A DNA stretch of 64,000 nt, from positions 62,001 through 126,000 of the IMG/VR virus record IMGVR_UViG_3300037882_003354. One strand, 5' to 3'. Under the pieces are notes generated by a model. It worked only from the letters and a program-made list of their open reading frames with translations, made no database searches and was not told the DNA's origin. Positions 4,517 through 58,025 of the stretch are shown piece by piece. The translations under genes were made by a program, and so were the position numbers. Every line of letters begins with the position of its first letter. Within the stretch, counting starts at the first letter, position 1.

Positions 4517-4537
4517 CACATGCTCTAATTTGTTAGA

Positions 4538-5337: not shown

Positions 5338-5410
5338 GACACATTCCTTTTGTAATATTTAGCATGCATGGACACGGTGTAAAAACATATACATAATTCG
5401 CCCAAACCAG

Positions 5411-5470: not shown

Positions 5471-5501
5471 ACAGACATTAACACACACATAAGGAGATTA
5501 C

Positions 5502-5780
5502 ATGTCAACACCTTTCACCACCCCCAAGCTGCCAGAAGTCAAGTTTAATAAGAATGGATACGAGATCCGTTCAGATATCCTGGACATGGCCAAGAATCTG
5601 GTCACTGAAGAATATCATTCCAAGTTTCACGGCTGGGAAATGTCAGTGGCCAAGGACGAAAAGACCGGCGCGTTGGTTACCACAGTGGGCATGCCTGCTT
5701 TCCCAGGCCTGGACAAAGTTCTTGAAACAGCAGAAAAAATGTACAGTTTTGTAAATGCCGGTGCTGTCAAGAGTAAATAA
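5502..5780 (+). CDS. hypothetical protein
   Basis: 92 aa, AAGGAG SD; lone plus-strand gene in this block. Confidence 0.8.
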   Translation: MSTPFTTPKLPEVKFNKNGYEIRSDILDMAKNLVTEEYHSKFHGWEMSVAKDEKTGALVTTVGMPAFPGLDKVLETAEKMYSFVNAGAVKSK

Positions 5781-7434: not shown

Positions 7435-7624
7435 AGGAGTATTTAGTTATAAAAGTGCCCCCTGGTTTTTAGCATCCGGGTAGCGAATCCATTTGCTCAA
7501 GGCCGGGGGCCCGCCTCCATCACGCAACTAGTGCGGGTCCTAAGGATGGTCCTGTTTAAGTTCTGGCGGATGTGGTATGTTCACCATGTCATACCCGTAT
7601 CTCGCAAGACCTTGTATTATTTGT

Positions 7625-8443: not shown

Positions 8444-8478
8444 ATAATAGTAGTGACCGTCAACTACTATTATTTATG

Positions 8479-42837: not shown

Positions 42838-43350
42838 ATGAGCGCCGTACTAATATTAAATTCCGACGCATCACCCATCAGCCTGCTGCCCTTGAGTTTG
42901 ATCAGCTGGGAGGAAGCCATTCGGTACATGGTGACTGACAAAGCCACGGTGCTAGAATGGTATGATGACTGGATTGTGCGCAGTCAGAATTGGAGCACCC
43001 CAGTACCAGCTGTCATGATACTCAAACATTATCAGAAGAAGAAGACCACCATAAGATTCAGCAAGCAAAATATATTTTTGCGTGATGGGTACATTTGTCA
43101 ATATTGCGGTGTGGATGTCAACCGCAAGACTGCCACCCTGGATCACATACTACCCATCAGTCTGGGGGGCAAAAATTCATGGACCAACACCTGCTGTGCC
43201 TGTTCCCACTGCAATAGTAACAAGGGCAATGACCATCGCATTGTACCTCGAACCAAGCCCGGTGTGCCCACCTACTTCCAACTGGCGGAAAAAAGAAAAC
43301 GTCTGTGTTGGGACACCATCCATCCCAAGTGGAGATGCTACTTGGAATAA
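42838..43350 (+). CDS. HNH endonuclease
   Basis: RDGYICQYCG..TLDHILPISLGGKNSWTN..CACSHCNSNKG. Confidence 0.9.
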   Translation: MSAVLILNSDASPISLLPLSLISWEEAIRYMVTDKATVLEWYDDWIVRSQNWSTPVPAVMILKHYQKKKTTIRFSKQNIFLRDGYICQYCGVDVNRKTATLDHILPISLGGKNSWTNTCCACSHCNSNKGNDHRIVPRTKPGVPTYFQLAEKRKRLCWDTIHPKWRCYLE

Positions 43351-44282: not shown

Positions 44283-45047
44283 TCACCTAAATACAACATT
44301 TACATTATATCCCATTTTTTTAGTGGCTTCAAGTTTAGCCATATTCTTTTCTTTATACTTTGCCCAGGTATATTTGGATTTTACTTCAATAATTAAATTT
44401 AACTTAGGGATATAGATGTCAGGATAATATCTATGATTATTCCCATTGAAAAAATAAGGTATGTGTGGGACGTTACCTTGCCCAGTGATTATATCGTCTT
44501 CAGTTAAACCAGATTTTAATAAATCTAATATTACTTTATTTTCAAATCCCTGATAACGGCGTGTATCACCGCTGGGCATCACCATTGTCTTGGTAAGATA
44601 ATCGTTCTGTGAGTTCTTTAGTAATACTTTTTCAAGTATATCTGTATTCTTTGTTGGGTTATCTACACCGTATTTTTCCATCCAAGTGGCTTTTCGGCGA
44701 TTTTTAAATTCGTCTGTGCTATTGTAACTCTCAACTCCATACTTTTCTAACATAGTTTCTTTTCGCTTGCGACCCACTTCAGGCCAAGCATCTTTAATCT
44801 TATCTTTGTTTATTTGTGCTTTAGAAGGATTATCCACTCCATAATTCTTCATCCAGGTTTCTTTCTTTTTATTCAAAACATCTGCTATCTGGCTTACATT
44901 AGTCACACCGTAAGTATCCATTAAAAATTGTTTTTTCTTTGCCTGAACGCCTGGACAACTATTTGGACTTACTGCACACCCCCATTTTCCGCTTTTAAAC
45001 AACTTTATTGCAGATTTCCCACATCCATAATCGCATATATGTTCCAT
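44283..45047 (-). mobile_element. free-standing homing-type endonuclease (PD-(D/E)XK) with KYGVxN repeats
   Basis: Start moved to MEHIC at 45047 (GGAG SD, own CATAAATA 45065-45072); four (K/T)YGV(D/E/T)N repeats; YYPDIYIPKLNLIIEVKS; AT-rich island. Confidence 0.7.
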
Positions 45048-45093
45048 AGTATTACTCCTACATATATTTATGCTTATGAGGGTATTATGATGG

Positions 45094-46407
45094 TTATAGT
45101 TTGTCGCCGGCGGAAAATCCCCTAAACCGCTCAAATCGTGGAAACCTTAAACTATATACAGATTCAGAATCTTGACTCTGCGTAATACAATCTGCCTTAA
45201 CCTCAATCACTTGTCCAATAACATTTTCCCGATCGCTCCAGATTTCATCTCGTTGTTCATCAGTGAGACCAGATCCTACGTTTACCCGGATAAATTTATC
45301 TTGATCAATACCTTCACAAATTAAAGCACCTAACTTGCCTGCATTTTTCCCAGTACCTTCTTCTAAATTAATGATAGTTAAGTCAACAGTAAGCACTGGT
45401 TTAACCTTTAACCAGGATACGCTGCGTTTAAACGAATATGATGCTGATGGATCTTTAATTAGAATGCCTTCAAATCCTGACTGAATGGCATCCAGATTGA
45501 ATTGCCGGAATTCCAGTTCACCCACACATGTGCCCAGATCCACTTCCTGTTGCGGCACCATGTCCATGTGACCCACCGCTTCAAAGATGGGCAGCATGTT
45601 CCGGAGTGCCTGACTGCGGCGTGCTTGTGATTGTGAACTGAATCCGCGCTGGAATTCCGGCAGTGGCAACAGGTCGAACAACATGAGACGAGCATCGTCA
45701 CTCTTGACGTTACTCTTGCGGTGTACTTGTTTCATCAAGGCCTGGAAACTACTGGACACCATCTCACCATCCAGTACCACGCTGGACTTGAACAAGTCCA
45801 TGTTGGCTTCAATGGCTTCGGTGATGTGCGGAAAGTTTTCCAGGATCTTGCCGTTACGGCTATACATGGTGGCGGTTCGGTTGTCCACGTTGACCACTGT
45901 GATGACGCGCACACCATCCAGTTTGATCTCCAACAACTTTTTACCCGCAATCTTCTTTTCATGGTTAGCACCGTCGTGGGCCAGCATGCACTCAAATAGT
46001 GGCACAGCATAGTCGGCCCGTCCTGCCAGTTTGACCATCTTGTTCACAGTGGTCTCACTGAAGCCGGCTCGCATGTCCTTGATCAGTATGCGACGATACC
46101 AGCCGTTCCATTGTGCCGCGGTGCTGGCCGACAGTGCCAGTTCGATGGCATCACGGGCATCATGTCCCGTGAATTCTCGTTGTGACAATGCACGGGCCAG
46201 TTCGGCAAATGCCACCCAGGGCAATCCCTGTCCATCTGGACCAGTGAACGTGGGCACCTTCTTGACACCGAATGTGATCATGGGATCGAAGCAAAGTCGT
46301 AGACCCTGAAAGAATTCAGTGTTACCTGCCTCGGCTTCACGACGTACAATGGCCTCTTTGAACAGACGACTGTTGTCAGATTCAAGTTCTTGGATAATTT
46401 CATGCAT
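45094..46407 (-). CDS. lig: ATP-dependent DNA ligase
   Basis: EIKLDGVR (KxDG), LDGEM, FDLL, EGILIK, WLKVK, LRFPRF motifs. Confidence 0.95.
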   Translation of the reverse strand: MHEIIQELESDNSRLFKEAIVRREAEAGNTEFFQGLRLCFDPMITFGVKKVPTFTGPDGQGLPWVAFAELARALSQREFTGHDARDAIELALSASTAAQWNGWYRRILIKDMRAGFSETTVNKMVKLAGRADYAVPLFECMLAHDGANHEKKIAGKKLLEIKLDGVRVITVVNVDNRTATMYSRNGKILENFPHITEAIEANMDLFKSSVVLDGEMVSSSFQALMKQVHRKSNVKSDDARLMLFDLLPLPEFQRGFSSQSQARRSQALRNMLPIFEAVGHMDMVPQQEVDLGTCVGELEFRQFNLDAIQSGFEGILIKDPSASYSFKRSVSWLKVKPVLTVDLTIINLEEGTGKNAGKLGALICEGIDQDKFIRVNVGSGLTDEQRDEIWSDRENVIGQVIEVKADCITQSQDSESVYSLRFPRFERFRGFSAGDKL

Positions 46408-46438
46408 GATATATCAGCAGTTGATTGAACATACGCAT

Positions 46439-46467
46439 AGTATACAACACATTCATCAGATTGTCAA
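46439..46467 (-). promoter_or_regulatory. sigma70 promoter of ligase
   Basis: TTGACA-17-TATACT. Confidence 0.75.
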
Positions 46468-46785
46468 TCACTTGAACAGAATGAACCCCATGAGCATGGT
46501 CTGTGCAAAGAATCCCACACAGATGGTGGCAATGTACAGCACATTTCTTTCGATCAGGGCCTTGAACAGAATGGTGATCAGGGCACTCCACACGAAGATC
46601 ATGAGATCCACCGGCGGCAATCGATCACTCTGTCCAGTCAGCACAGCCAACAGCGTGGGCAGACTGGCAAAGTGCAGCAGCACGATGGCCACCCAGCCCA
46701 GCGTGTGTGCACTGATCTTGCCCAGATGATCACGGAAAAAGGCGCACACTGTGCTGGGAATATTTTGAATGGTTTGCAGTTTCAT
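46468..46785 (-). CDS. small multi-pass membrane protein
   Basis: 105 aa with three hydrophobic segments. Confidence 0.75.
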   Translation of the reverse strand: MKLQTIQNIPSTVCAFFRDHLGKISAHTLGWVAIVLLHFASLPTLLAVLTGQSDRLPPVDLMIFVWSALITILFKALIERNVLYIATICVGFFAQTMLMGFILFK

Positions 46786-46793
46786 TTGAGTCC

Positions 46794-47363
46794 TTATTTG
46801 TAAAAAATGTGATGGCCAATGTGTGCCACTCGCTGTCGTTTCCAGCCTGGGCTGATATAGTCTCCGTGGAAATACTTGGCATCCTTCAGGCTGGGCAGGG
46901 TGAATCCCTCCAACAGCACCTTCTTGGCAGCAATCATGCTCTCGTCATAACTGGCCTGATTGACAGGTCTGAACATGACCTCCCTGTCGCAGAACCAGCT
47001 GAACTGACAGATGACTTTGTCATATACCACGTTCTTCTGATAGATCACGCGACAGACATCTCCGGGAAATTCGCCGCTGTTCACACGGTTCATTACCACT
47101 TGTGCCACGGCCACCTTGCCTTCAAATGGTTCCCCGCCGGCTTCATAATACACATTCTTGGCCAGACATGCCAGCTCACGTTCCCTGACTGCGGCGGTCA
47201 CTTCTGATGTTTCCACCACTTGGATTTTGGACATCTTATCTGTGACAGCCCAGTCCAGCAGAGCGGCTGCCGCCATTAGACCCACGGCCATGAGCAGGAC
47301 ATTGATCATCCTGATGAAAAATACAGATACTTGTATGGGCTGATCTATTACATCTTCAGTCAT
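46794..47363 (-). CDS. SleB-like cell wall hydrolase (Hydrolase_2) with N-terminal TM anchor
   Basis: CLAKNVYYEAGGEPFEGKVAVAQVVMNR, CQFSW, YFH, IGHHIFY. Confidence 0.9.
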   Translation of the reverse strand: MTEDVIDQPIQVSVFFIRMINVLLMAVGLMAAAALLDWAVTDKMSKIQVVETSEVTAAVRERELACLAKNVYYEAGGEPFEGKVAVAQVVMNRVNSGEFPGDVCRVIYQKNVVYDKVICQFSWFCDREVMFRPVNQASYDESMIAAKKVLLEGFTLPSLKDAKYFHGDYISPGWKRQRVAHIGHHIFYK

Positions 47364-47474
47364 ATTGACTCCTTATTTGTTTAATGGTAAGAATAATTAT
47401 GCTTGAAGCACACACTCTACACTAAAATGAAATAAAGTCAAGTGGCCCGGCAACCACAGGACTTTACTGGGTCG

Positions 47475-50051
47475 TCACTTGGGGTAGGATACTATGCTGG
47501 TGCGAATTGCGCCCAGTCTGTTGAATCCCAGGAAGTACTGAGTCTGGGTGCTGTCACCCACCGGTGCTGACAATTGACTGTAACGAGTGCCCAACAACGA
47601 ATAATAGTAGGGCGTATATTGCAAGTTGTACAACGTGGCATCGGTTGCAACAGACAGTCCATTGCTGGACACCCTTCTCAAGTTTGCAGATTGAAATGAT
47701 ATGCCCACGTTGCCAACACCGTCGTCAGTGGCTGTAAAAAAACTACCATCTGATCCAAAAAACGCACCATATGAATCCATCATGGTGTTGCCGTAGTATT
47801 TGATATAATAATTTTTACTACGATAGGTACCAGCACCCAGTGTCAATGGTATCCGGTAAACTTCTCGCCAGTAGGCATATGCTGGCAAGGATCTCACTGG
47901 GGTCAATGTTGACCAGATGATCAAGTTGTCACTGGCACGTTTTAGTCGTATGGCCGCTGATGCACCAGTGTAGCCCACCTTGGTGTTGGTCACATACCAG
48001 GTGAGTGCATGTGTGCCAGCCGTCAGGTAAACCTCACCAGTGTGTTCCACTTGGTACGGGTTGGGCATGTTGCGCAGGTCGCCCACCAGTGTGCCATCAA
48101 TGTCAAACCAACCATAGTCATCCATGGCCAGTGACCAGGCGTAATTGCCAGAGGTGGGCACCTGGATGGTGTAACTTCTGTTCACCAGAGAGTCCGTGGG
48201 TGACACCAGGTCTGGATTGACCCAGACTCCGAAATCATTTAGGAAACGGCTATACACTGACTCAGACTTTGACTTGTACACCACTGGTCCACTGGTAAAT
48301 TTGGCATCGGCATCGAATTTCAGTGTGGATGCGGACATGTAGGAGATGCCGCCTGTGGCCAGTGGTGGTGCCAGGTCGCCGCCGCCGCCAATGCCCACCG
48401 TGAGATATCTGATGCCACTGATAATGTCATAGCTCACACCCACCACACTGTTGTCTGCACCCAGTGCACTCAACCAACTGCCCAGTCGCTGGTCTGCAGG
48501 TTGAGTGTAATTCACAATCAGGTTGGTCACTGTGGTGGCGGTGCTCAATTCCGATGCAATGGACACCACCGTGAGAGTGGAAGTGTAGGTGCCCGTGGGT
48601 GCTGACCCAGGATTGAACACCACCAGCACATCACTGTCAGCTGTGATGGATGCAGACTGTGATCTATTGGGGAAAGTAAATCCAGCATGACCATTCAGCG
48701 TGGCTGAAGATGTGTTGATGGCATAGCCGGATGGGATGATGTTGAAGGCCTGATTCAGCTCAGACAATGAGCCACTGCTGGTGGACCAGCTGGCTGGACT
48801 TAGTGATGTCCTGAATGTGGCCGTGGAAACCACCTGAGTGAACCTGACGGTGTATAGCCCTGCAGTGTTGTCACTGGCCACAGTGAAACTGTTTTGCCAG
48901 GTGCCCACTGTGATGCCTGAATAGGTCAGGTCAAATTGGGTGGTTGATCTAGGCGGCATCACCACCGGAAAACTGCCTAATCCGCTGTAATCAGGGATGG
49001 CCACCACATCACCATTGTTAGTGAAAGTGATGCCGCTAATGGTCAGTGAGCTGTTGCCAGTATTGCGCAGAGTTATAGTGGTTGCTGTGGAACTTTCATA
49101 TGCACGCCAGGCAAATCCACCCACTGGCGAATTTATGGACAGTATCTTGGAGGTGCTGGATGAAAACGGACTGGCGTCACCAAAGCCTAGCACACTGGTC
49201 AACTCTGGCTGTGTGGCGGCCAGTCCCTGAATGGCCTGATCAGCATCACCGCGACTGTAATAGTAGGTGGCGGTGTTGTATACGTCCAGACGTATGGCGG
49301 TGCCTGCATGAGCCAGGGTCATGGTGGCAGTCACCTGTTGATTGGTAAAGCCCGACACTGCCATACGCATGGTCATGACTTCCGGGCGGGTACCCACAAT
49401 GGTGGATGTGGTCAGTGAGATTGCTCTATCGTTGCCCAATTTATTGTAGTCTGACAGTGAAAACTGGTTGACTGGCAATTGCAACTGACCACGCATCCAA
49501 TCTATATGACCCATCCAGGCACTCTCCAGCGTGGTGGGGTTGGTGATACTGACATAGGCCGGTTGCATGACCAGCCGTCCGCCCAATCTAAAAAATTGCT
49601 GTATGCTGATGTCATTATCAGTGCCATCAAACCAGTCATAAGTCACCGTGTGCGTCAGGGTGGATGTCCAGTCGGTTGCAGTGAAGGTGTCACGTGCACC
49701 GGTGCTCAGTGTGGCCAGGCCCAGTTGTGCAGGACTGTGCAGCGTGGCGGTGTTGGCCACGATGAAATTGGTGGCTGAAATAATGGCGTTGACGTAGGTG
49801 GCTGTCAACCATGTGGAGGTGGTGGCTGGTACTTGCGTGTTGGTCTGGTGTGCCATGGCTCGACTGAGATCGTCGTACAATTCCTGCCAGTCTGCCACTG
49901 TCACTGTGGCACCTGCACTCACTGTGTTGCTGCGCATCTGGGCAGCGTCCAGCTTGTAATAGCCGGTGATCACACCCGCCACATCACTCTGTATTTCATT
50001 ATATTGGGCGGCTGTGACGATGGAGTTGGTGGTGACTGTGGTTATTGCCAT
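47475..50051 (-). CDS. virion structural protein with Ig-like (ASH/Hydin-like) and PA14-like domains
   Basis: I.A.QYN N-terminus; ITLRNTGNSSLTISGI (Ig-like); MDDYGWFDIDG..LTAGTH.L (PA14-like); CTAAATA 50076-50082. Confidence 0.7.
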   Translation of the reverse strand: MAITTVTTNSIVTAAQYNEIQSDVAGVITGYYKLDAAQMRSNTVSAGATVTVADWQELYDDLSRAMAHQTNTQVPATTSTWLTATYVNAIISATNFIVANTATLHSPAQLGLATLSTGARDTFTATDWTSTLTHTVTYDWFDGTDNDISIQQFFRLGGRLVMQPAYVSITNPTTLESAWMGHIDWMRGQLQLPVNQFSLSDYNKLGNDRAISLTTSTIVGTRPEVMTMRMAVSGFTNQQVTATMTLAHAGTAIRLDVYNTATYYYSRGDADQAIQGLAATQPELTSVLGFGDASPFSSSTSKILSINSPVGGFAWRAYESSTATTITLRNTGNSSLTISGITFTNNGDVVAIPDYSGLGSFPVVMPPRSTTQFDLTYSGITVGTWQNSFTVASDNTAGLYTVRFTQVVSTATFRTSLSPASWSTSSGSLSELNQAFNIIPSGYAINTSSATLNGHAGFTFPNRSQSASITADSDVLVVFNPGSAPTGTYTSTLTVVSIASELSTATTVTNLIVNYTQPADQRLGSWLSALGADNSVVGVSYDIISGIRYLTVGIGGGGDLAPPLATGGISYMSASTLKFDADAKFTSGPVVYKSKSESVYSRFLNDFGVWVNPDLVSPTDSLVNRSYTIQVPTSGNYAWSLAMDDYGWFDIDGTLVGDLRNMPNPYQVEHTGEVYLTAGTHALTWYVTNTKVGYTGASAAIRLKRASDNLIIWSTLTPVRSLPAYAYWREVYRIPLTLGAGTYRSKNYYIKYYGNTMMDSYGAFFGSDGSFFTATDDGVGNVGISFQSANLRRVSSNGLSVATDATLYNLQYTPYYYSLLGTRYSQLSAPVGDSTQTQYFLGFNRLGAIRTSIVSYPK

Positions 50052-50147
50052 GGTGGTTCCGTAATTTAGTGCTAATATTTAGTCACATTCTGGTTGGCGT
50101 CAGGTTCCTGGGTTGTAAATAACATTATATACATGTATAATATGCTT

Positions 50148-50912
50148 ATGAAAAAATTTAAACATTCAGGAACTTCAGGAGACCTCATCTACGGACTGGC
50201 CCTGATGAAACATTTCGGTGGAGGTGAGTTTTATCTGCACTTGAATCAGGTGGACTGGACCACCAGACACTACTATGGCGGCGAATCTGATGCATTCCAC
50301 CGGGGACGCATGAACCAGGCCGATGCTGAATTCATGCGAGGCTTCCTGCTGGCACAGGATTACATCACATCGTTTGGCACCCTGGACAACTCCACGGAAA
50401 TCACTCACAATCTGGACAGATTCCGAACCCTGTTCGTGGGTCATCCCACCAATTACCTGGACATCTATTCCCGAGTGTTCAACCTGACGCCGGACCAGCA
50501 GGCAGTGGTGAATTCCACGCCCTGGCTGACCGTGCCCACGCCCACTGTGATTCCCGGCAAGAGTGTGGTGATCAGTCGCACTCAGCGATGGATTCCTGCC
50601 CAGCCGGGCAGCATCTGGCAGGACATCAAGGGCGAAGCGGAGCCGCATGCTGTGTTTGTGGGCTTGCCCGAGGAACATGTGGCATTCAAACAACAGATGA
50701 ACTGGGACATACCGCATGTGGTCACGCACACCCTGCTGGAGTTGGCACAGGTGATAGCCGGAGCAGAAACATTTGTGGGCAATCAGAGTCAGGCCCTGGC
50801 CCTGGCAGTGGGGCTGGGGGTCAGTGACATCATATGTGAATCACGAGTGGACCTGCCCTTGGAGCGGAACGAATGTTACTTCCCACGCATGCCAAATGTC
50901 AGATACACCTGA
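50148..50912 (+). CDS. GT-B glycosyltransferase (GT9/heptosyltransferase-like)
   Basis: HSGTSGDLIYGL and LLELAQVIAGAETFVGNQSQALALA motifs; TTGTAA-17-TATAAT (50113-50141) 6 nt before ATG at 50148. Confidence 0.7.
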   Translation: MKKFKHSGTSGDLIYGLALMKHFGGGEFYLHLNQVDWTTRHYYGGESDAFHRGRMNQADAEFMRGFLLAQDYITSFGTLDNSTEITHNLDRFRTLFVGHPTNYLDIYSRVFNLTPDQQAVVNSTPWLTVPTPTVIPGKSVVISRTQRWIPAQPGSIWQDIKGEAEPHAVFVGLPEEHVAFKQQMNWDIPHVVTHTLLELAQVIAGAETFVGNQSQALALAVGLGVSDIICESRVDLPLERNECYFPRMPNVRYT

Positions 50913-50917
50913 TGTGG

Positions 50918-50946
50918 TTGACAATGCATGCTGATCACTGTATAAT
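50918..50946 (+). promoter_or_regulatory. consensus sigma70 promoter
   Basis: TTGACA-17-TATAAT. Confidence 0.8.
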
Positions 50947-50981
50947 AAAGACTGCACAACAACACTGGAAAGACCAACATC

Positions 50982-51125
50982 ATGTACACATTTGAAGTCT
51001 GGGTTCGCCTGAACACCTATCAAACCACACGAGTTCGCATTCAAGCTGACAACGGCAATGATTGCCGTCTGATCGCCGAGGCCCAATACGGCCAGGGCAA
51101 TGTTTTAGACTACCGGCATGTGTGA
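50982..51125 (+). CDS. 47-aa hypothetical protein
   Basis: Below ORF-track cutoff; MYTFEVWVRLNTYQTT...AQYGQGNVLDYRHV; follows promoter, stop overlaps next ATG. Confidence 0.7.
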   Translation: MYTFEVWVRLNTYQTTRVRIQADNGNDCRLIAEAQYGQGNVLDYRHV

Positions 51126-51892
51126 TGGCCAAACAAAAACAAAAACGACTGGGCATAATTCAATCGCGTGGACTGGGTGACATTGTCATCTCCCTGCCCA
51201 TAGCTCATTACTATCATGAGCAGGGCTGGCACGTGCACTGGCCCATCATGGAGCAGTGGGTGCAGCAGATGCAGGAGGCCGCGCCCTGGGTCAAATGGAT
51301 TCCAGTGGCCCAGGATTCAGGTGCCTTCTTCTATGATGTGCCCTTGGAGCGTCTGCAGAACTTCAAGTGTGACGAGATCCTGTGCCTGTATCAGGCCCTG
51401 TCAGGTCATCCGGAGTTCACTCAGGAGCCCTGGTTCCAGCACACCAATTTTGATCAGTACAAGTACATACGTGCTGGAGTGCCATTCATGAACAAATGGC
51501 GTCTGGCTGATTGTATAACCAGAAATCCTGCACGAGAGCAAGCACTACATGATCGCCTGGTCACACAGCATGATTATGTGGTGGTTCATTTGACCGGCAG
51601 CAATCACACTGCGGCATTTGACACTGCCATGATACCTGAAGACTGGCAGGTGATCGAGATTCAGGATCAGGCTGAATCCATCTGGGATTGGCTGGGAGTG
51701 CTGTCAGGTGCTCAGAGCATCGTGTGCGTGGACAGTGTGTTCAGCAACCTGGTGGACCAACTGGGTCTGGGAGAAGACCGATACTTCATTCCCCGCAGCC
51801 ACATACAACTGACCCCCACCCTGGGTCAGGCGTGGACCTGGTTACACAATGCCCGACTGGATCCTGCCGTGCGTATATTTGGAAGCAAATAA
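51125..51892 (+). CDS. GT-B glycosyltransferase (GT9-like)
   Basis: Start moved to 51125 (TGATG); QSRGLGDIVISLP and IVCVDSVFSNL motifs. Confidence 0.7.
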   Translation: MAKQKQKRLGIIQSRGLGDIVISLPIAHYYHEQGWHVHWPIMEQWVQQMQEAAPWVKWIPVAQDSGAFFYDVPLERLQNFKCDEILCLYQALSGHPEFTQEPWFQHTNFDQYKYIRAGVPFMNKWRLADCITRNPAREQALHDRLVTQHDYVVVHLTGSNHTAAFDTAMIPEDWQVIEIQDQAESIWDWLGVLSGAQSIVCVDSVFSNLVDQLGLGEDRYFIPRSHIQLTPTLGQAWTWLHNARLDPAVRIFGSK

Positions 51893-51922
51893 AAATCCAC
51901 TACAGCCAGTCACTGGCATGTT

Positions 51923-52549
51923 TTACTCATCTGCCGCCTGAGACTCATCTGACAGCACCATCAGCGGCTGAGAAAAACCAATTTTCAGTGGATCCACATT
52001 GCCCTCCAGGACCATGGCATTTTGTGGAATTAGACCGATCTTCTGTAATGCTGCCCAGGTATAGGGATTTGACATGGCGTTGCGAAGTTTTGCTGGTGAT
52101 GGGTGACCTGTGGCAATCAGTTCGGCATGAATTTCCTTGCCAATCATCACCGTGAATTCGTTGGCAGCATTGGCTTCAAACATCTGCTCGTCTGTGTATC
52201 CTGGAATACGAGTGGGCTCGGCAATTTCATACAATTCAGCAAGCAGCCGTTGGAGAATGGCAATCTCCTGGCGATTGAGTTCAAATGCTTCTTCTTGTGT
52301 TTTTAGCACAGAATTGAGCTCAATGAGTTCCGCTTGTAGATTGAGAATGATGTGTTCCAGCGCACCAATGGATTTTAGATGCTCTATTTCACTTATCTTG
52401 GCCCGATACTTGAGAGCAGCCACCTCTTCCAGTGCCGCCGCCCGGATACGACCCTCAAGGAATCCTTGTAAGGTTTTGATCTTTTCCCAGGGCGTCTCAC
52501 CAATAACTTGATAACGATAATTAAATTCAGAGTTTAGTTTTACAGCCAC
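51923..52549 (-). CDS. helical coiled-coil protein next to adhesin genes (possible chaperone)
   Basis: 208 aa, GTG start, AAGGAA SD, AATAAATA 52574-52581. Confidence 0.7.
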   Translation of the reverse strand: MAVKLNSEFNYRYQVIGETPWEKIKTLQGFLEGRIRAAALEEVAALKYRAKISEIEHLKSIGALEHIILNLQAELIELNSVLKTQEEAFELNRQEIAILQRLLAELYEIAEPTRIPGYTDEQMFEANAANEFTVMIGKEIHAELIATGHPSPAKLRNAMSNPYTWAALQKIGLIPQNAMVLEGNVDPLKIGFSQPLMVLSDESQAADE

Positions 52550-52659
52550 GTTGTATTTCCTTGGTTAAAAAAATATTTATTAGCTGGCAAAACCGGCTGC
52601 TGTTAAACTGGATCTAGCACTGCCTACACTTTGAAGGTGTTGCCATGGGTGGTTTCCTG

Positions 52660-53739
52660 TCAGCCGAATGTGGCGGCTGCTAGCCTGGTTCTAGTATTAC
52701 CCACCCCTGCAGTATCTAGGGCAACTACACCTGTATTGGACACTAAGTTGGTCATAGATAAATACGTAATAGCAGTCTCACCAAACCCAAATATAGCTTT
52801 ATCACCACCATAACCTGCGGCTGCTAGTACGTATCTAGCAGTGCCCACACCTGCAGTGTCTCCGGCAACTACACCTAGGTTAGACACTAGACTGGTTATA
52901 TTTACAACTCCGGGACTAGCCCCATATCCAAATATAACTTTATCACCGCCATAGCCAGCTGCTGCTGAACTATGTCTAGTAGTGCCCACACCTAGAGTAT
53001 CTCCGGCAACCACACCTAGGTTGGACACTAGGTTGGTCAAGGCATAAACGACAGCAGGGAAAACACCGGAAATCCCATATCCAAATATGGCTCGGTCACC
53101 GCCATAACCAGCTGCTGCCACGCCTTGTCTGGCAGTGCCCACACCTAGAGTATCTCCAGCAACCACACCTGTATTGGACACTAGGTTGGTCATAGATAAA
53201 TCTGAAGTAGATTTTCCATAGCCAAATATGGCACGGTCACCGCCATAACCGGCGGCTGCCAAACCGAATCTGGCAGTACCCACACCTAGGGTGTCTCCGG
53301 CAATCACACCTGTATTGGACACTAGGTTGGTTATGGATGAGTTTGTGGCAGGGGTAGTTGGTAGTATACCATGTCCGAATATGGCACGGTCACCGCCATA
53401 ACCAGCAGCAGCCAAGGAGCGCCTACCAGTGCCCAACACTGTGATATCTGCAGCAACTACACCTGTGTTGGACACTAAACTAGCCAAGTTATATGACTGT
53501 GGCGCTCCCGATGCCCCATAGCCAAATATAACCTTTGCGTTTGTATTAATTCTCCGAGTGCCATAATATTTGGATATACTGACTGCACCACTGCCAGGCA
53601 CAGCACCATTTGTCCCACTGGTACCTGCTATGGTGTACGATCCACCAGCATAGTATTCACTCAGGCTGATGGGATTGGCACCACCAAACTCGGTTTGAAT
53701 TTGACTGAATGAAATGCTGCCAGTGCCAGGTATTGCCAT
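52660..53739 (-). CDS. Kelch-like six-blade beta-propeller adhesin (paralogue 1)
   Basis: MAIPGTGSISFSQIQTEFGG.NPISLSEYY leader + 6 repeats TNLVSN.GVVAGDT.GVGT.R..AAAGYGGD.AIFGYG. Confidence 0.75.
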   Translation of the reverse strand: MAIPGTGSISFSQIQTEFGGANPISLSEYYAGGSYTIAGTSGTNGAVPGSGAVSISKYYGTRRINTNAKVIFGYGASGAPQSYNLASLVSNTGVVAADITVLGTGRRSLAAAGYGGDRAIFGHGILPTTPATNSSITNLVSNTGVIAGDTLGVGTARFGLAAAGYGGDRAIFGYGKSTSDLSMTNLVSNTGVVAGDTLGVGTARQGVAAAGYGGDRAIFGYGISGVFPAVVYALTNLVSNLGVVAGDTLGVGTTRHSSAAAGYGGDKVIFGYGASPGVVNITSLVSNLGVVAGDTAGVGTARYVLAAAGYGGDKAIFGFGETAITYLSMTNLVSNTGVVALDTAGVGNTRTRLAAATFG

Positions 53740-53754
53740 GTGTGGTTCTCCCTG

Positions 53755-54864
53755 TCAGCCAAATGTGGCTGCTGCTAGGCCGCTTCTAGCAGTTCCCACA
53801 CCTGCAATTTCTGAGACAACTGCACCCAGGTTGTTCACTCGGTTGGTTATGTTGTAGTAGGTGGTTATTCCGGATATTTTAGAACCATATCCAAATACGG
53901 CTTTATCACCACCATAACTGGCGGCTGCTACACCAGTTCTAGTGGTGCCCACACCTGCAATTTCTGAGACAACTGCACCCTGGTTGTTTACCAAGTTGGT
54001 TATAGAAAAATAGGTGGTGCTAAAGGTAGATCCATATCCAAATATAACCTTGTCACCACCATAGGTGGCGGCCGCTAGACCGCCTCTAGCAGTGCCCACA
54101 CCTGTGGCATTTGAGGCAACGTCGCCGGTGTTGGACACTAGGTTGGTTACAGATACCCATGCGCCTGCGGCAGTACTCCCATATCCAAATATAGCTCTAT
54201 TACCGCCAAATGTAGCTGCTGCTAAATTAGACCTAGCAGTGCCCACACCTGCGGTGTCGCCGGCCACGCCGCCGGTGTTGTTCACTCGGTTGGTAACAGA
54301 TAGCATTGTACCGCCGTTGGGTTGGCCGCCGAACCCATATCCAAATACAGCCCGATCACCACCATAGCCGGCGGCCGCTAAACTATATCGAATAGTGCCC
54401 ACACCTGCGGTGTCGCCGGCCACGCCGCCGGTGTTGTTCACTCGGTTGGTAACAGATACTATTACAGCGAACTGGTTGCTGCTGTATCCATAGCCGAATA
54501 TGGCTTTATCACCACCATAGCCAGCGGCTGCTAAAATGTATCTGAGTGTGCCCACACCCGTGACATCCCCGGCGACCACACCTGCGTTGGACACCAGGTT
54601 GGTCATGGATACACTGCTGAGCTGATTGGCGAACCCATAGCCAAATATAACTCTGGCGTTGGTGTTTATAATAAGTTTTTGAGTGCCATAAAATTTACTC
54701 ATGGCAAAGCTACTGCTGCCAGGCACAGCACCATTGGTTCCGCTGGCACCTGTGGGTGTGTACAAGCCACCAGCATAATACTCACTCAGGCTGATGGGGT
54801 TACTACCACCAAATTCGGCTTGAATTTGACTGAATGATATGCTGCCAGTGCCAGGTATTGCCAC
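53755..54864 (-). CDS. Kelch-like six-blade beta-propeller adhesin (paralogue 2)
   Basis: Same leader (GTG start) and six repeats of the same framework. Confidence 0.75.
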   Translation of the reverse strand: MAIPGTGSISFSQIQAEFGGSNPISLSEYYAGGLYTPTGASGTNGAVPGSSSFAMSKFYGTQKLIINTNARVIFGYGFANQLSSVSMTNLVSNAGVVAGDVTGVGTLRYILAAAGYGGDKAIFGYGYSSNQFAVIVSVTNRVNNTGGVAGDTAGVGTIRYSLAAAGYGGDRAVFGYGFGGQPNGGTMLSVTNRVNNTGGVAGDTAGVGTARSNLAAATFGGNRAIFGYGSTAAGAWVSVTNLVSNTGDVASNATGVGTARGGLAAATYGGDKVIFGYGSTFSTTYFSITNLVNNQGAVVSEIAGVGTTRTGVAAASYGGDKAVFGYGSKISGITTYYNITNRVNNLGAVVSEIAGVGTARSGLAAATFG

Positions 54865-54867
54865 GAG

Positions 54868-55203
54868 TTACACCCGAGTCAGTGCCGCAAGTGCCTGTGA
54901 TTCAGTGACGTCCAGATCATAGTTGCGGGCCAGGAATCGGGCGAACAGAGCCTGACGACCCGGTGAGTATTTGAGTTGTTCACGATAGGCTTCTACCTCA
55001 TACTCAAATCGTCGGGTCCGAGACAGCCAGTAGGGTATGCCAAAAAGTCCGAAACTACGCCAAAATTGTCGGACATGTACCAATTCGTGTTGTAATAGTC
55101 CCACATCATCTCGACAGCGTGGTCTAATGAGCACCAAGGGTCCCAGTGTGTAACCACTGAATCGGTCAGGCATGAGGTCGGTGTATATGATCAGGTGTAG
55201 CAT
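54868..55203 (-). CDS. small HExxH-motif protein
   Basis: LLQHELVHVRQ...EYEVEAY. Confidence 0.7.
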   Translation of the reverse strand: MLHLIIYTDLMPDRFSGYTLGPLVLIRPRCRDDVGLLQHELVHVRQFWRSFGLFGIPYWLSRTRRFEYEVEAYREQLKYSPGRQALFARFLARNYDLDVTESQALAALTRV

Positions 55204-55240
55204 GTGATGAGTCCTTTTAAAGGTTAAAGGTGGTGCAAGA

Positions 55241-55564
55241 TCAGGGTGCGCGAGCTGGCTGAATGCTGACCAGTGGAAATTCGGTCACGGTGCCAATCTC
55301 CTGAGTCAATTGGCTGACCAGCTGACCAAACGGTGCGCTTTCCTCCCTGAGCTGACGTTCACACTCCTGAATGCCCATGTGTGCCAGATGTGCCAGCGTG
55401 GCATGCACCTGTGCACTGGGCTCAGGCAGCCGACTGAGTGGCACCACATGGGTGGGGTATTCATCCAGGGGGCGTTGACTCTGATCACTGGCCCAGATCA
55501 CACTCAGTGTGTTGCTCAGGGTGTCAATGTTGGTTATTTTCAATCGAACGGTGCTCATGCTCAT
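55241..55564 (-). CDS. hypothetical late protein (possible fibre assembly factor)
   Basis: 107 aa, GGAG SD, GATAAATA 55591-55598. Confidence 0.65.
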   Translation of the reverse strand: MSMSTVRLKITNIDTLSNTLSVIWASDQSQRPLDEYPTHVVPLSRLPEPSAQVHATLAHLAHMGIQECERQLREESAPFGQLVSQLTQEIGTVTEFPLVSIQPARAP

Positions 55565-55593
55565 GCGGTCACTCCAGGTTTATATGTATATAT

Positions 55594-55995
55594 TTATCGG
55601 TCCAGCCGGCGCTCACTCACAGCATACACTGGATCAGGTGTCAGGAACTGGGGCTTGCGCATGATGGTCTTGGTGACCAGACGCCGGGAATCACCTGAAT
55701 CCTGAACGACAAAGGGCAGATTGATCTGAGTCAAGAGATCACGCATGACAGCCTCACTGCCCGAACCCAGATGAGCGATGGCTCGGCCATGTCGCTGATA
55801 CTCTTGTTTGAACAAGCGTATGAGTTCGGAGACAGTGATGTCACGACCATTGCGTGGATCATTCAGTCGGTCCAGGAAGTGTCGGGTGAATGACACATCT
55901 ATGCCCAGTCGACCCCACAGGCCGTCGGCAAAAGTCTCCACTTGATCCAGTTGTTGCTGGTCCAGGGTTTCACAGATGAGTTCGCGTAGTAGCAT
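55594..55995 (-). CDS. hypothetical late protein with MLLRELICE leader
   Basis: 133 aa; FTRHFLDRLNDPRN core; GATAAATA 6 nt before ATG. Confidence 0.75.
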   Translation of the reverse strand: MLLRELICETLDQQQLDQVETFADGLWGRLGIDVSFTRHFLDRLNDPRNGRDITVSELIRLFKQEYQRHGRAIAHLGSGSEAVMRDLLTQINLPFVVQDSGDSRRLVTKTIMRKPQFLTPDPVYAVSERRLDR

Positions 55996-56028
55996 GTGAA
56001 ATATTTATCCTGGTGGTACCGCCGGTGA

Positions 56029-56057
56029 TTGACTGATGAAGGGAGCCAGTGTATAGT
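56029..56057 (+). promoter_or_regulatory. sigma70 early promoter
   Basis: TTGACT-17-TATAGT. Confidence 0.75.
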
Positions 56058-56091
56058 AAACACACATTCACTCACACACCAAGGAAGACAC

Positions 56092-56664
56092 ATGAGTACC
56101 AGCTACTGGCTGTACATGCACCCGGAACTCACGGGCGAACCCGGCTATTGGAAGGTGGGCAAGAGCCTGACTCCCTACTCGGCAGTCAGAAGCCGACAGC
56201 GATTCCTGGTCAATGACTTCTATTTGACTGCGGTATGGTTCGGTCATCCCAATGACATAGCTGACCAGGAACGAGACATACTGGTACGGTTCCGACCACC
56301 TCACACTCAGCGACTGGGCAGCAGCCGTAGCGAATTGATCTACTACCAGCCACCGGCAGGGCAGCCACAACTGGCACAGGTGCTGGATCAGATGATACTG
56401 AGCAGTCAACGCAGGATCCAGCGCATGCACCCGGATGATGCCCGGGGCTATCATGCCACCAACAGTGGTCAATGCTGCTTTGGGAGTGACAGGGAGGCAT
56501 ATGCCCATGAATGGAGTGCCATGAAATTGATGGACATGTTCAACGTTCAGAGTCCACGCATGCGCAGTCAGCAGGACTATCAGGCTCTGGTGAACCATTT
56601 CGGAGCCAGGTATCGTAGTTCGCAGCCGGAGACAGACGCAGGAGTGCAGGAGACCGGGATGTAA
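56092..56664 (+). CDS. hypothetical protein, weak GIY-YIG/T5orf172-like pattern
   Basis: Start moved to 56092 (AAGGAA SD); YWLY...YWKVGKS..PY..VR.RQ. Confidence 0.6.
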   Translation: MSTSYWLYMHPELTGEPGYWKVGKSLTPYSAVRSRQRFLVNDFYLTAVWFGHPNDIADQERDILVRFRPPHTQRLGSSRSELIYYQPPAGQPQLAQVLDQMILSSQRRIQRMHPDDARGYHATNSGQCCFGSDREAYAHEWSAMKLMDMFNVQSPRMRSQQDYQALVNHFGARYRSSQPETDAGVQETGM

Positions 56665-56840
56665 AAAACCCCGCTAGACGTCATGGCATGACAGCATGTG
56701 TCCGGGCGCTCAGAGCAAATACCCCGCTAGACGCCTGGGCCGGGGAGCCAGGCATCATGCCCTGTATGCAAATACCCCGCTAGACGTATGAGCACCAGAG
56801 CAGGGTCTCATGCTCAGGGTGTAAAAAGCCCGCTAGACGT
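56664..56840. repeat. four 17-nt direct repeats with exact 53-bp period
   Basis: AAAWA(C/G)CCCGCTAGACG at 56664, 56717, 56770, 56823. Confidence 0.95.
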
Positions 56841-56860
56841 GCGGCCGGACCAGGCATGTA

Positions 56861-57034
56861 TGTGAATAACACTGTGATGAACCTGTGGATGGGCTGTGGG
56901 CGACCTGTGTACAGGCTGTGGATAACTTGGTGGACAGGGCAGGAGTATTTTGGCATAGTCTGCCTGCCTGCTCAGCGTGTGAAAACCCTGAATCAGAGTG
57001 ACCCTGTGACACCACCCCTGATTCATGTGGAATA
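56861..57034 (-). promoter_or_regulatory. DnaA-box cluster
   Basis: Perfect TTWTNCACA matches at 56861-56869 (TTATTCACA) and 56917-56925 (TTATCCACA); one-mismatch copies near 56978 and 57026, all same orientation. Confidence 0.6.
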
Positions 57035-57072
57035 CTCTGAATATTCACTGGCAGATCATGTGGTGGCCACCC

Positions 57073-57100
57073 TTGACAAGCTCAGGGTTTCCTGTATAAT
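57073..57100 (+). promoter_or_regulatory. sigma70 promoter upstream of tRNA
   Basis: TTGACA-16-TATAAT. Confidence 0.8.
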
Positions 57101-57145
57101 CTGATAAATAGACTCACCTGCTCAGATGGGTCACATGTTATTTAT

Positions 57146-57229
57146 GCCCGGGTGGTGAAATGGTAGACACAAGGGACTTAAAATCCCTCGGCGCAAGCTG
57201 TACCGGTTCGAGTCCGGTCCCGGGCACCA
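57146..57229 (+). tRNA. trnL-UAA: tRNA-Leu (anticodon UAA)
   Basis: GCCCGGG/CCCGGGC acceptor stem, TGGTAGAC D-loop, AGGGA-CTTAAAA-TCCCT anticodon arm, long variable arm, GTTCGAGTC, encoded CCA. Confidence 0.97.
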
Positions 57230-57231
57230 CA

Positions 57232-57640
57232 GAGTATGCTCCATACTCATCCGTTCACTGGAGCAAGACCTGTTTTGAGTACTCCAATATTATCCAATTG
57301 ATAATGATATGAGTATCTTGACAGGCCTCCGCTGAATATTTCCACATACTAGTATTGAGTATCTCCAGAGTAAGTCCTGATACTAATATCGAGTATCTGC
57401 CCGGGAGTATCTGAGTATTGAGTATGGGTATCTGCTCCGGAGTAAGTCCTGATACTAGTATTGAGTATGTATTATGTGTATGTATTTGGAGTATCATGGT
57501 AAATACTATACACACAGGAGTTACCATTATGATGATTGCACTATACTTTCTCTTCATGTTCATATTCTACATGGCGTTCTTATACTATTTCCGAGACTGA
57601 GTAACCGCATACTCCGGAGGTATGTTATCTCCTGGAGTAT
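57232..57640. repeat. GAGTA-rich tract with 18-bp direct repeat and palindromes
   Basis: 14 GAGTA copies counted on + strand; GAGTAAGTCCTGATACTA at 57368 and 57440. Confidence 0.85.
57529..57600 (+). CDS. 23-aa hydrophobic membrane peptide
   Basis: MMIALYFLFMFIFYMAFLYYFRD; AGGAG SD and TAAATA upstream. Confidence 0.5.
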   Translation: MMIALYFLFMFIFYMAFLYYFRD

Positions 57641-57721
57641 GTGATTCACACGCCCACCCTCGCCGTCCATCCCCAGACTGCCTGTTCGAACGCACGGTCA
57701 TCTTGTTGTTGTTGTGACTGT

Positions 57722-57749
57722 ATTATAGCGGTCTGACTCCATTCGTCAA
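57722..57749 (-). promoter_or_regulatory. leftward sigma70 promoter
   Basis: TTGACG-16-TATAAT on minus strand. Confidence 0.7.
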
Positions 57750-57752
57750 TCC

Positions 57753-57777
57753 AAGACCCTGCACCGTGTAGGGTCTT
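57753..57777. other. 11-bp inverted repeat between divergent promoters
   Basis: AAGACCCTGCA-CCG-TGTAGGGTCTT (one G-T pair). Confidence 0.75.
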
Positions 57778-57787
57778 TCTTCTGCGC

Positions 57788-57815
57788 TTGACAATCTCTC
57801 ACCGTGTGCTATAGT
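57788..57815 (+). promoter_or_regulatory. early promoter cassette (TATAGTACTGACAT type)
   Basis: TTGACA-16-TATAGT with TGn. Confidence 0.85.
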
Positions 57816-57842
57816 ACTGACATTGCAACAACGAAAGACATC

Positions 57843-58025
57843 ATGTATTTCCAACTCAGCTGGGTGTTCTCAAACGATCACGAGTGGCATAAGAACTTCG
57901 ACAGCCTGCACGAGCGTGAGATGTTCATTAACACCACCGGGCTCCTGACCCATCCGGACATCGTGCGTGTGACTGTTCAGATTGGCCAGTGCTCAGCTGA
58001 CCTGAAAAATGTCTTGACAGCCTGA
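57843..58025 (+). CDS. small early protein
   Basis: Start moved to 57843; 60 aa. Confidence 0.65.
   Translation: MYFQLSWVFSNDHEWHKNFDSLHEREMFINTTGLLTHPDIVRVTVQIGQCSADLKNVLTA

What the first reader, a model, noticed from the sequence alone, without database searches (positions are those of the whole stretch)
51923..55564. Twin propeller adhesins: constant framework with hypervariable loops
Seen: two tandem paralogues, 12 blades in total, with an almost invariant framework (also similar at DNA level). Variation is concentrated in the 4-12-residue loop after IFG(Y/H/F)G (e.g. ILPTTPATN, KSTSD, ISGVFPAV, FGGQPNGGT, STAAGAW) and the 2-3 residues after the Arg. Known: in Kelch propellers these positions lie on one binding face; T-even gp38 likewise uses conserved Gly motifs around hypervariable segments. 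Inference: a recombination-driven, antibody-like receptor diversification locus with flanking chaperone-like genes and no RT in the window.
Basis: partly seen in the sequence, partly recalled or inferred. Interest (0 to 1): 0.6.

Follow-up and report, generated by a model that had tools for sequence, protein, structure and literature searches.

The report
Tandem phage Kelch propellers, variable loops
Two neighbouring genes of a 322-kb freshwater jumbo phage encode six-bladed Kelch-type propellers with a near-constant scaffold and highly variable loops on one face; they are probably exchangeable host-binding tail modules, diversified by ordinary recombination and selection rather than by a programmed, antibody-like mechanism.

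Summary
Window 52660-53739 and 53755-54864 (minus strand) encode paralogues of 359 and 369 aa. Each has a ~70-aa N-terminal module and six 44-52-aa repeats. AlphaFold2 with Foldseek gives a six-bladed Kelch-type propeller, although no Pfam Kelch model matches. Variation sits in the B-C loop (after IFGYG) and in the two residues after the Arg, which by blade topology lie on the same face. The pattern holds in 666 blades from 107 related genes.

The genes belong to a viral family of more than 2,000 metagenomic proteins. In 77 of 83 related phage loci, one to four six-blade genes lie directly upstream of a conserved 208-aa helical-hairpin gene.

Recombination is supported:
- identity to a sister phage jumps from ~72% to 98% at the stop codon of gene A;
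- copy number varies;
- a third copy survives as a relic;
- a five-blade allele exists.

Programmed diversification is not supported. The genome has no reverse transcriptase and no serine or tyrosine recombinase. The locus has no inverted repeats, and substitutions show no adenine bias. Near-identical relatives show no targeted mutation.

The adhesin role is inferred from context. It is a new variant of a known kind.

The parts
53755..54864 (-). Propeller gene B, 369 aa, GTG start. The N-terminal anchor module is about residues 1-72 (54649-54864). The six Kelch-type blades are at 53758-54648.
   Evidence: 6 blade-HMM domains
52660..53739 (-). Propeller gene A, 359 aa. The N-terminal anchor module is about residues 1-70 (53530-53739). 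The six Kelch-type blades are at 52663-53529. The protein ends straight after the last strand A (LAAATFG), as expected if a C-terminal strand closes the ring.
   Evidence: AF2 model pLDDT 82, above 90 in the propeller; Foldseek KLHL17/KLHL12/Keap1 TM 0.78-0.85
52580..52646 (-). Relic of a third propeller gene. The B/A intergenic motif and the start ATGGCAACACCT are joined directly to the last ~50 nt of a propeller gene, which read out of frame as ...GVGSARSSLTAAGFAS*. The relic is also present, 98% identical, in the sister contigs L003 and L004.
   Evidence: repeat family D1 copy at 52637-52766
51923..52549 (-). Conserved 208-aa gene encoding a long antiparallel helical hairpin plus a small helical domain. 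It lies directly downstream of the propeller array in 77 of 83 related phage loci. It is 98-99.5% identical in protein to L004, L005 and L007, whose propellers are only 61-65% identical.
54868..55203 (-). 111-aa ORF with an HExxH-type motif (HELVH). It matches phrog_13761 and, weakly and below cut-off, eCIS_core/DUF4157. It lies upstream of the array here and in L005 but is not conserved with the module elsewhere.
55241..55564 (-). 107-aa ORF with no family match. It is included in the finding's span but is not conserved with the module.

Best explanation
The two genes encode small modular appendage proteins of a jumbo phage. Each has a ~65-70-aa N-terminal anchor that docks the protein on the tail apparatus, and a monomeric six-bladed Kelch-type beta-propeller that binds a host-surface ligand. 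The ligand-binding face would be the one formed by the six B-C loops and the six D-A loop ends. The scaffold (strands, Gly turns, the Arg) is held by purifying selection. The face loops are free to vary in sequence and length, so each paralogue probably has a different specificity.

Diversity is maintained across a large clade of aquatic phages as a pool of old, discrete alleles. Phages exchange, gain and lose whole genes, and occasionally whole blades, by ordinary homologous or illegitimate recombination. Breakpoints fall at conserved gene ends, and the repeated, conserved framework DNA offers further homology. The linked 208-aa helical-hairpin protein probably works with the conserved part of the propeller, as an assembly factor or an attachment partner.

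Shown: the fold, the location of the variation, the family-wide pattern, the synteny, the recombination footprints, and the absence of a dedicated diversifier. Inferred: virion location, ligand binding, and the role of the 208-aa protein.
For: Fold:
- AF2 model has pLDDT above 90 over the propeller.
- Foldseek against PDB gives E down to 6e-15 and TM 0.78-0.85 to KLHL17, KLHL12 and Keap1 Kelch domains.
- BFVD hits include Kelch-like 'virion structural proteins' of phiKZ-like phages. The Kelch protein CBB_552 was found in virions by mass spectrometry (PMC5259590).

Variable face:
- In 666 blades from 107 genes, entropy is 2.8-3.8 bits at loop positions 6-15, which also vary in length, and 3.5-3.7 bits at the two positions after the Arg. 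Most framework positions are below 1.2 bits.
- In Keap1 the B-C and D-A loops form the binding pocket (PMC12314335).

Tail association:
- The N-terminal motif recurs at the start of genes inside the tail module of Lentibacter phage ICBM1 and beside a tail-fibre gene of Xanthomonas phage RTH11.
- In relatives the same propeller is the C-terminus of proteins with tail-fibre or tail-spike N-termini, Laminin_G_3/baseplate-wedge-like repeats, fn3 or Mtd_N.
- The window itself is rich in tail-fibre and tail-spike genes.

Recombination:
- Identity to L004 is 68-82% in the propeller and 98-100% from its stop codon onward.
- dS is 0.04 in the 208-aa gene against 0.5-0.7 in the propeller framework.
- Arrays hold 1-4 copies.
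- A third copy survives as a relic.
- An exact one-blade deletion allele is seen in L003 and again in a Logan contig of run X1.
- For 67 of 69 array genes the nearest relative is in another phage.

No dedicated mechanism.
Against: - No direct evidence shows that the proteins are in the virion or bind anything. The host is unknown.
- The N-terminal module is modelled at low confidence (pLDDT 37-60).
- No Pfam, NCBIfam or informative PHROG match supports a tail function for A or B themselves.
- The face assignment rests on blade topology and the DSSP strand order. I could not reach the model's coordinates to measure it.
- Loop pN/pS is 0.83, below 1, from few substitutions (25 nonsynonymous, 10 synonymous). 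Relaxed constraint alone could explain the loop variation.
- Population-level diversity could not be measured, because only assembled contigs were available.
Confidence: 0.6

Rival explanations
1. The propellers are intracellular host-takeover proteins. They would bind host proteins, as Kelch substrate adaptors of eukaryotes and poxviruses do. They are not virion components, and loop variation would track host-protein variation.
For: The closest solved folds are substrate-binding Kelch domains, and poxvirus Kelch proteins appear in the BFVD list. There is no direct virion evidence for A or B.
Against: There is no BTB/BACK or other adaptor domain. The N-terminal module and the fusion partners in relatives are tail-type: tail fibre, tail spike, baseplate-wedge-like and Mtd_N. 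The genes lie among tail-fibre genes. Multi-copy arrays of divergent alleles are typical of receptor-binding proteins.
Confidence: 0.13
2. The propellers are enzymes, for example carbohydrate-active or oxidase-type Kelch propellers. They would act as depolymerases or surface-modifying enzymes rather than as pure binders.
For: Galactose-oxidase-type annotations occur among weaker BFVD hits. Many phage tail appendages are enzymatic. A cell-wall hydrolase lies downstream of the 208-aa gene in 14 loci.
Against: The best-conserved residues are scaffold residues (Gly, Ala, Val and the Arg), while the central face loops are the most variable part. No candidate catalytic residue was looked for. No enzyme family matches.
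Confidence: 0.08
3. The proteins are virion decoration proteins. They would bind environmental or non-receptor surfaces weakly, as Ig-like decorations do, rather than determine host range.
For: They are small, monomeric-looking modules. Copy number is variable and apparently dispensable (1-4 copies). A five-blade allele persists.
Against: The framework shows strong purifying selection, and the genes keep their place next to a highly conserved partner gene across a very large clade. Fusion partners are tail-type, not capsid-type.
Confidence: 0.12
4. The locus is subject to programmed diversification: a DGR-type retroelement, a shufflon or invertase switch, or another targeted hypermutation. This is the 'antibody-like' reading.
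For: The proteins have a constant scaffold with hypervariable loops. Some relatives carry an Mtd_N domain, known from the Bordetella phage DGR target.
Against: No RVT_1 match at E<=1 anywhere in the complete 322-kb genome. Differences between A and B are spread over all four bases, with transitions leading. No inverted repeats in 51500-56000. No resolvase/invertase or tyrosine recombinase in the genome. Loops and framework have equal synonymous divergence in close pairs. Array members are ancient lineages.
Confidence: 0.02

Closest known systems
Kelch-repeat beta-propeller domains (Keap1, KLHL12, KLHL17)
   Same: Six four-stranded blades. The TM-score is 0.78-0.85. The repeat logic is the same: a hydrophobic strand A, a Gly turn, strand B ending in a Gly motif, a long variable B-C loop, and a conserved Arg in the D-A loop. 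The protein also ends right after a strand A, as in the C-terminal strand closure described for Keap1. In Keap1 the ligand pocket is formed by the B-C and D-A loops.
   Different: Sequence identity is only 12-16%. No Pfam Kelch model matches at E<=0.1. There is no BTB/BACK domain. The blades are far more uniform with one another than in cellular Kelch proteins.
Kelch-like proteins of jumbo phages (vB_PcaM_CBB CBB_550/552/554; phiKZ-like 'virion structural proteins'; BcepSaruman Kelch-motif protein)
   Same: They are jumbo-phage-encoded Kelch-type propellers. Some have been shown to be in virions (CBB_552). They are structural matches.
   Different: Those proteins are recognisable by InterPro Kelch signatures and are only 10-20% identical to A and B. 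In the sources I read they are not described as tandem arrays of alleles with a constant framework, and no function is established for them.
T-even phage gp38 adhesins (glycine-rich motifs framing hypervariable segments)
   Same: The design principle is the same: conserved Gly-rich scaffold motifs alternate with hypervariable segments that point to one end, and diversity is generated by recombination among phages.
   Different: The fold is unrelated. No gp38 family appears among the PHROG matches. gp38 caps a long trimeric fibre, whereas these proteins carry their own short N-terminal anchor.
DGR target proteins (Bordetella phage Mtd, tentaclins)
   Same: Both are phage receptor-binding scaffolds with concentrated variability. 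Some relatives of A and B carry an Mtd_N domain at the N-terminus. Tentaclins are described in PMC10743442.
   Different: The genome has no reverse transcriptase, the locus has no template repeat, the substitutions show no adenine bias, and the variable domain is not a C-type lectin fold.
Beta-propeller receptor-binding proteins of other phages (phi11 RBP, PRD1/PR772 P2)
   Same: They set a precedent for a propeller used as a phage host-recognition domain (titles and abstracts listed).
   Different: They have other propeller types and blade numbers, no detectable relationship to A and B, and no tandem allele arrays.

Membership tests
Kelch-type beta-propeller (structural class) | Six (or seven) four-stranded antiparallel blades arranged in a ring | tested here: met
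   AF2 DSSP shows six repeats of strands B-C-(D)-A with propeller pLDDT above 90. The top 50 Foldseek PDB hits are all six-blade Kelch domains or designed Kelch-like propellers, E 6e-15 to 2e-12.
Kelch-type beta-propeller (structural class) | Ligand face formed by the B-C and D-A loops, with the variable positions on it | tested here: inconclusive
   Strand order from DSSP places the variable segment between strands B and C, and the two variable residues at the end of the D-A loop. By the meander topology of a blade these lie on the same face, as in Keap1. I could not reach the coordinates to measure it.
Pfam Kelch repeat families (Kelch_1 to Kelch_6) | Sequence match to a Kelch profile above the gathering score | tested here: not met
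   No Pfam family at E<=0.1 for either protein. No NCBIfam match. A profile of 50 family members finds no PDB sequence at E<=1.
Diversity-generating retroelement target | A reverse transcriptase encoded in the element or genome | tested here: not met
   PF00078 finds no match at E<=1 in the complete 322,512-bp genome. The control genomes respond.
Diversity-generating retroelement target | Template/variable repeat pair that differs at adenines | tested here: not met
   The 343 differences between A and B are spread over all bases: 81 A, 83 C, 71 G and 108 T sites in A, with transitions the most frequent changes. The only repeats are the blade units at 63-85% identity and the N-terminal 153 nt at 86%.
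Invertible or shufflon-type receptor switching | Inverted repeats flanking the segments, plus a site-specific recombinase | tested here: not met
   Zero inverted repeats of 24 nt or more in 51500-56000. No Resolvase (PF00239) or Phage_integrase (PF00589) match in the genome.
Phage receptor-binding or tail-appendage protein | Modular build: a conserved N-terminal anchor shared with tail-module proteins, plus an exchangeable distal domain | tested here: met
   Homologues of the N-terminal motif start genes in the tail modules of cultured phages. The propeller is fused to tail-fibre, tail-spike and baseplate-like N-termini in relatives. The divergence pattern is mosaic.
Phage receptor-binding or tail-appendage protein | Presence in the virion and binding to the host surface | not testable with these tools
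   The phage is uncultured and the host unknown. This needs proteomics, cryo-EM and adsorption assays.

The most novel reading that the evidence does not exclude
The propeller plus 208-aa gene pair is a self-contained, portable host-recognition cassette used across a very large clade of aquatic phages. In this reading the Kelch scaffold serves as a general combinatorial binding platform. It presents six B-C loops plus six D-A positions, with blade-level as well as gene-level shuffling, including 5-, 12- and 18-blade forms. The invariant helical-hairpin protein would be its dedicated folding or docking partner. That would be a natural loop-display system distinct from both DGR/C-type-lectin and gp38-type solutions.
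Probability: 0.3. Interest if true: 0.7.

Novelty: new variant of a known kind. Interest (0 to 1): 0.5.

Why it matters
Host-recognition proteins of uncultured jumbo phages are largely unknown. This work defines a very large, almost purely viral family: more than 2,000 metagenomic members, and only six hits, all in MAG contigs, among 185,579 species genomes. The binding face is easy to recognise, the module has a conserved partner gene, and the arrays have a clear genomic address. If the members are receptor-binding proteins, the arrays give a direct handle on host range and multi-receptor strategies in freshwater and marine jumbo phages. The uniform six-blade scaffold with tolerant loops would also be an attractive natural template for engineered binders. 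The work further shows that a pattern which looks antibody-like can arise with no dedicated diversifier detected.

Tried and rejected
- DGR: rejected.
- Invertase or shufflon: rejected.
- Recent tandem duplication or concerted evolution of whole genes: rejected. A and B are no closer to each other than to genes of other phages, and 67 of 69 array genes have their nearest relative elsewhere. Only the first ~150 nt look homogenised or strongly constrained.
- Recent gene-conversion tracts between A, B, L005 and L007: none found. Sliding windows give 49-92% identity without near-identical blocks.
- Propeller A (residues 60-359) co-folded with the 208-aa protein: no verdict, score 0.04 against a mark of 0.34. 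This counts neither for nor against binding.
- Fold of the 208-aa protein: it is a confident helical hairpin, but Foldseek finds nothing at E<=0.001 and VIA Z values of at most 9.8 are in the range common for long helices. The Atlas feature search was uninformative.
- Population pile-ups: only Logan contigs were on offer, with no raw reads. The contigs fragment inside the propeller genes. Many foreign contigs share only the ~40-nt LAAAGYGGDKAIFG framework segment.
- Literature: hits for 'Kelch' in phage structure papers were mostly an author's name.
- The large representative protein search was not used, because the word search already found the family. No alternative genetic code was needed.
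Full report
SETTING. The window is bases 62001-126000 of a complete 322,512-bp virus record with direct terminal repeats, so it comes from a jumbo phage. Runs that hold parts of the locus are freshwater or lake metagenomes. The window carries many large tail-fibre, tail-spike and structural genes on the minus strand. It also carries a SleB-type cell-wall hydrolase, a DNA ligase and one tRNA-Leu.

OBSERVATION. Two minus-strand ORFs lie 15 nt apart: A at 52660-53739 (359 aa) and B at 53755-54864 (369 aa, GTG start). Each has a ~70-aa N-terminal part followed by six repeats of 44-52 aa. The repeats run IFGYG, a variable loop, TNLVSNTGVVAGDT.GVGTAR, two variable residues, then LAAAGYGGD(K/R)A. Across the 12 blades, variation is concentrated in the loop after IFGYG, which is 5-10 residues long and also varies in length, and in the two residues after the Arg.

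The paralogues are 61-63% identical in protein and ~67% in DNA. Identity reaches 93% in the first 60 nt and 86% in the first 153 nt.

FOLD. No Pfam or NCBIfam family matches at E<=0.1. A 50-member profile finds no PDB sequence. An AlphaFold2 model built on 50 homologues has a mean pLDDT of 82. The propeller is above 90 and the N-terminal 65 residues are below 60.

Foldseek places the model among six-bladed Kelch domains (KLHL17, KLHL12, Keap1), with E down to 6e-15 and target TM-scores of 0.78-0.85. In the viral library the top hits are uncultured tailed phages. Lower down are the Kelch-motif protein of Burkholderia phage BcepSaruman, 'virion structural proteins' of phiKZ-like phages, and poxvirus Kelch proteins.

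The DSSP order is strand B (AIFGYG), the variable loop, strand C (..TNLV), the SNTG turn, a short strand D, the GVGTAR loop, two variable residues, strand A (LAAAG), and the YGGD turn. The variable segments are therefore the B-C loop and the end of the D-A loop. In a four-strand meander these lie on the same face. In Keap1 they form the ligand pocket (PMC12314335). I could not reach the coordinates, so this mapping is topological, not measured.

FAMILY. The word-based protein search scored 8,000 candidates and found 2,121 with E<=0.001. The propeller framework is 50-67% identical across them. The N-termini differ: Mtd_N, Laminin_G_3, fn3 and others. Only six contigs in 185,579 species genomes carry the family. 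All six are MAG contigs, assigned to six unrelated lineages, and one has the same length as a viral contig already in hand. The family is thus essentially viral.

In this phage only A and B carry the propeller or the N-terminal motif.

SYNTENY. The 208-aa gene downstream (51923-52549) has 146 relatives in IMG/VR at 63-97% identity. In 77 of 83 fetched loci, one to four tandem six-blade genes lie directly upstream of it. Some are C-termini of proteins of 759-1,653 aa, and one locus (L074) has ORFs with 12 and 18 blades. None of the other neighbours (111, 107, 133, 276, 272 and 858 aa) is conserved outside the closest relatives. The conserved unit is therefore [propeller array][208-aa gene].

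Fusion partners in long relatives are Laminin_G_3 repeats matching baseplate-wedge or virion structural PHROGs, tail-fibre and tail-spike N-termini, and RCC1- or lactonase-type propellers. The N-terminal motif of A and B recurs at the start of a gene in the tail module of Lentibacter phage ICBM1. It also starts small genes next to a tail-fibre gene of Xanthomonas phage RTH11, each time with a different C-terminal domain. This is the basis for calling A and B tail-appendage modules. It is contextual evidence.

VARIATION ACROSS THE FAMILY. In 666 blades from 107 distinct genes, loop positions 6-15 have 2.8-3.8 bits of entropy and variable length. The two post-Arg positions have 3.5-3.7 bits. Most framework positions have below 1.2 bits. 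The 'constant framework, hypervariable loops' pattern is a family property.

HOW DIVERSITY ARISES.

Against a dedicated mechanism:
- No RVT_1 match anywhere in the genome.
- No adenine bias among the 343 A/B differences.
- No inverted repeats in the locus.
- No serine or tyrosine recombinase in the genome.
- In six near-identical gene pairs, synonymous divergence is about the same in loops (0.042) and framework (0.035). pN/pS is 0.83 in loops, 0.51 after the Arg and 0.36 in the framework. This means relaxed or diversifying selection on the loops, not targeted mutation. The counts are small.

For recombination:
- Against the syntenic contig L004, identity is 68-82% through the propeller and jumps to 98-100% exactly at the stop codon of A. 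It stays there through the relic spacer and the 208-aa gene, and is 91-95% in the 276-aa gene. It falls to 59-65% in the 272-aa gene and the N-terminal half of the 858-aa Ig-like/PA14 protein, and is 85-91% in the hydrolase and ligase.
- dS is 0.04 for the 208-aa gene against 0.5-0.7 for the propeller framework (window against L005).
- L007 shares the 208-aa gene at 94% nucleotide identity, has a ~70%-identical single propeller, and shows no other flank similarity.
- L005 has one propeller gene between the 111-aa and 208-aa genes, where the window has two.
- The 110-nt spacer after gene A is a relic of a third copy: its start is joined to its last ~50 nt.
- Contig L003 is ~97% identical to gene A but lacks exactly blade 2 (153 nt, window 53263-53415), which gives a five-blade protein. 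The same junction appears as a loose end at 53262 in a Logan contig of run X1. It may be the same sample assembled independently.
- Array members are old lineages. Within-array identity averages 56% against 52% between loci, and 67 of 69 genes have their nearest relative in another phage.

THE 208-AA PROTEIN. It is modelled with confidence (pLDDT 86) as a long antiparallel helical hairpin plus a small helical domain. Structure searches give only generic coiled-coil matches. A co-fold with propeller A returned no verdict. Its role as a partner is inferred from linkage alone.

LIMITS. Only assembled contigs were available for read laying. Virion location, ligand and host are all unknown.

VERDICT. 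The finding is a real and well-defined feature. It is a new variant of a known kind: modular phage host-recognition proteins, here built on a Kelch-type propeller. The fold, the single variable face and the role of recombination are supported. The programmed, antibody-like reading is not.

Noticed in passing
window 52580-52646 (minus strand): Relic of a third propeller gene between gene A and the 208-aa gene. The conserved intergenic motif and start codon are fused to the last ~50 nt of a propeller ORF. It is conserved at 98% in L003 and L004.
   Followed up: yes
L003:26-952, against window 53263-53415: A ~97%-identical allele of gene A lacks exactly one blade (153 nt), giving five blades. The breakpoint has only ~5 nt of microhomology. 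The same junction is seen in a Logan contig of run X1. Every other family member examined keeps six blades per propeller.
   Followed up: partly
L074:1-2316, 2396-5746 and 6640-11601: A related phage contig has ORFs with 12 and 18 blade-HMM hits, which would be two or three propellers in one polypeptide. One of them lies downstream of the 208-aa gene.
   Followed up: no
window 47475-50912: Against the sister contig L004, the 272-aa gene (50094-50912, plus strand) and the N-terminal half of the 858-aa Ig-like/PA14 protein (47475-50051, minus strand) are as divergent as the propellers (59-65% nucleotide identity). The adjacent 276-aa and 208-aa genes are 91-100% identical. These may be further host-interaction hot spots.
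   Followed up: partly
window 44283-45134 (minus strand) and 42838-43350 (plus strand): A 283-aa DUF7487/TnsA-like endonuclease gene is missing from the syntenic contig L004 (a gap at ~44290-45190). An HNH endonuclease gene lies nearby. These are probably mobile homing-endonuclease genes.
   Followed up: partly
window 54868-55203 (minus strand): The 111-aa ORF directly upstream of the array carries an HExxH-type motif (HELVH). It matches phrog_13761 and, below cut-off, the eCIS_core/DUF4157 domain. It is also present in L005 but not elsewhere with the module.
   Followed up: partly
window 57146-57229 (plus strand): tRNA-Leu (anticodon TAA). A 38-nt stretch is 97% identical to a tRNA-Leu of Aeromonas phage AerS_266. 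This was the only near-identical DNA match of window 45000-58000 in the phage collection.
   Followed up: no
window 8479-13101 (minus strand): A 1,540-aa protein combines glycosyltransferase-like and methyltransferase-like PHROG matches within the structural gene region.
   Followed up: no
L088-L093 (genome contigs): The only 'cellular' hits of the propeller family are six MAG contigs. They are assigned to six unrelated lineages: Oligoflexia, Rhodoferax, Acidimicrobiia, Bacteroidales, Sulfurovum and SAR202. They are most likely viral contigs binned by mistake. L089 has the same length (39,858 bp) as IMG/VR contig L082.
   Followed up: partly
window 46794-47363 (minus strand): The SleB-type cell-wall hydrolase (Hydrolase_2) has a hydrophobic N-terminal segment that looks like a signal anchor. 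A homologue lies ~1 kb downstream of the 208-aa gene in 14 related loci.
   Followed up: no
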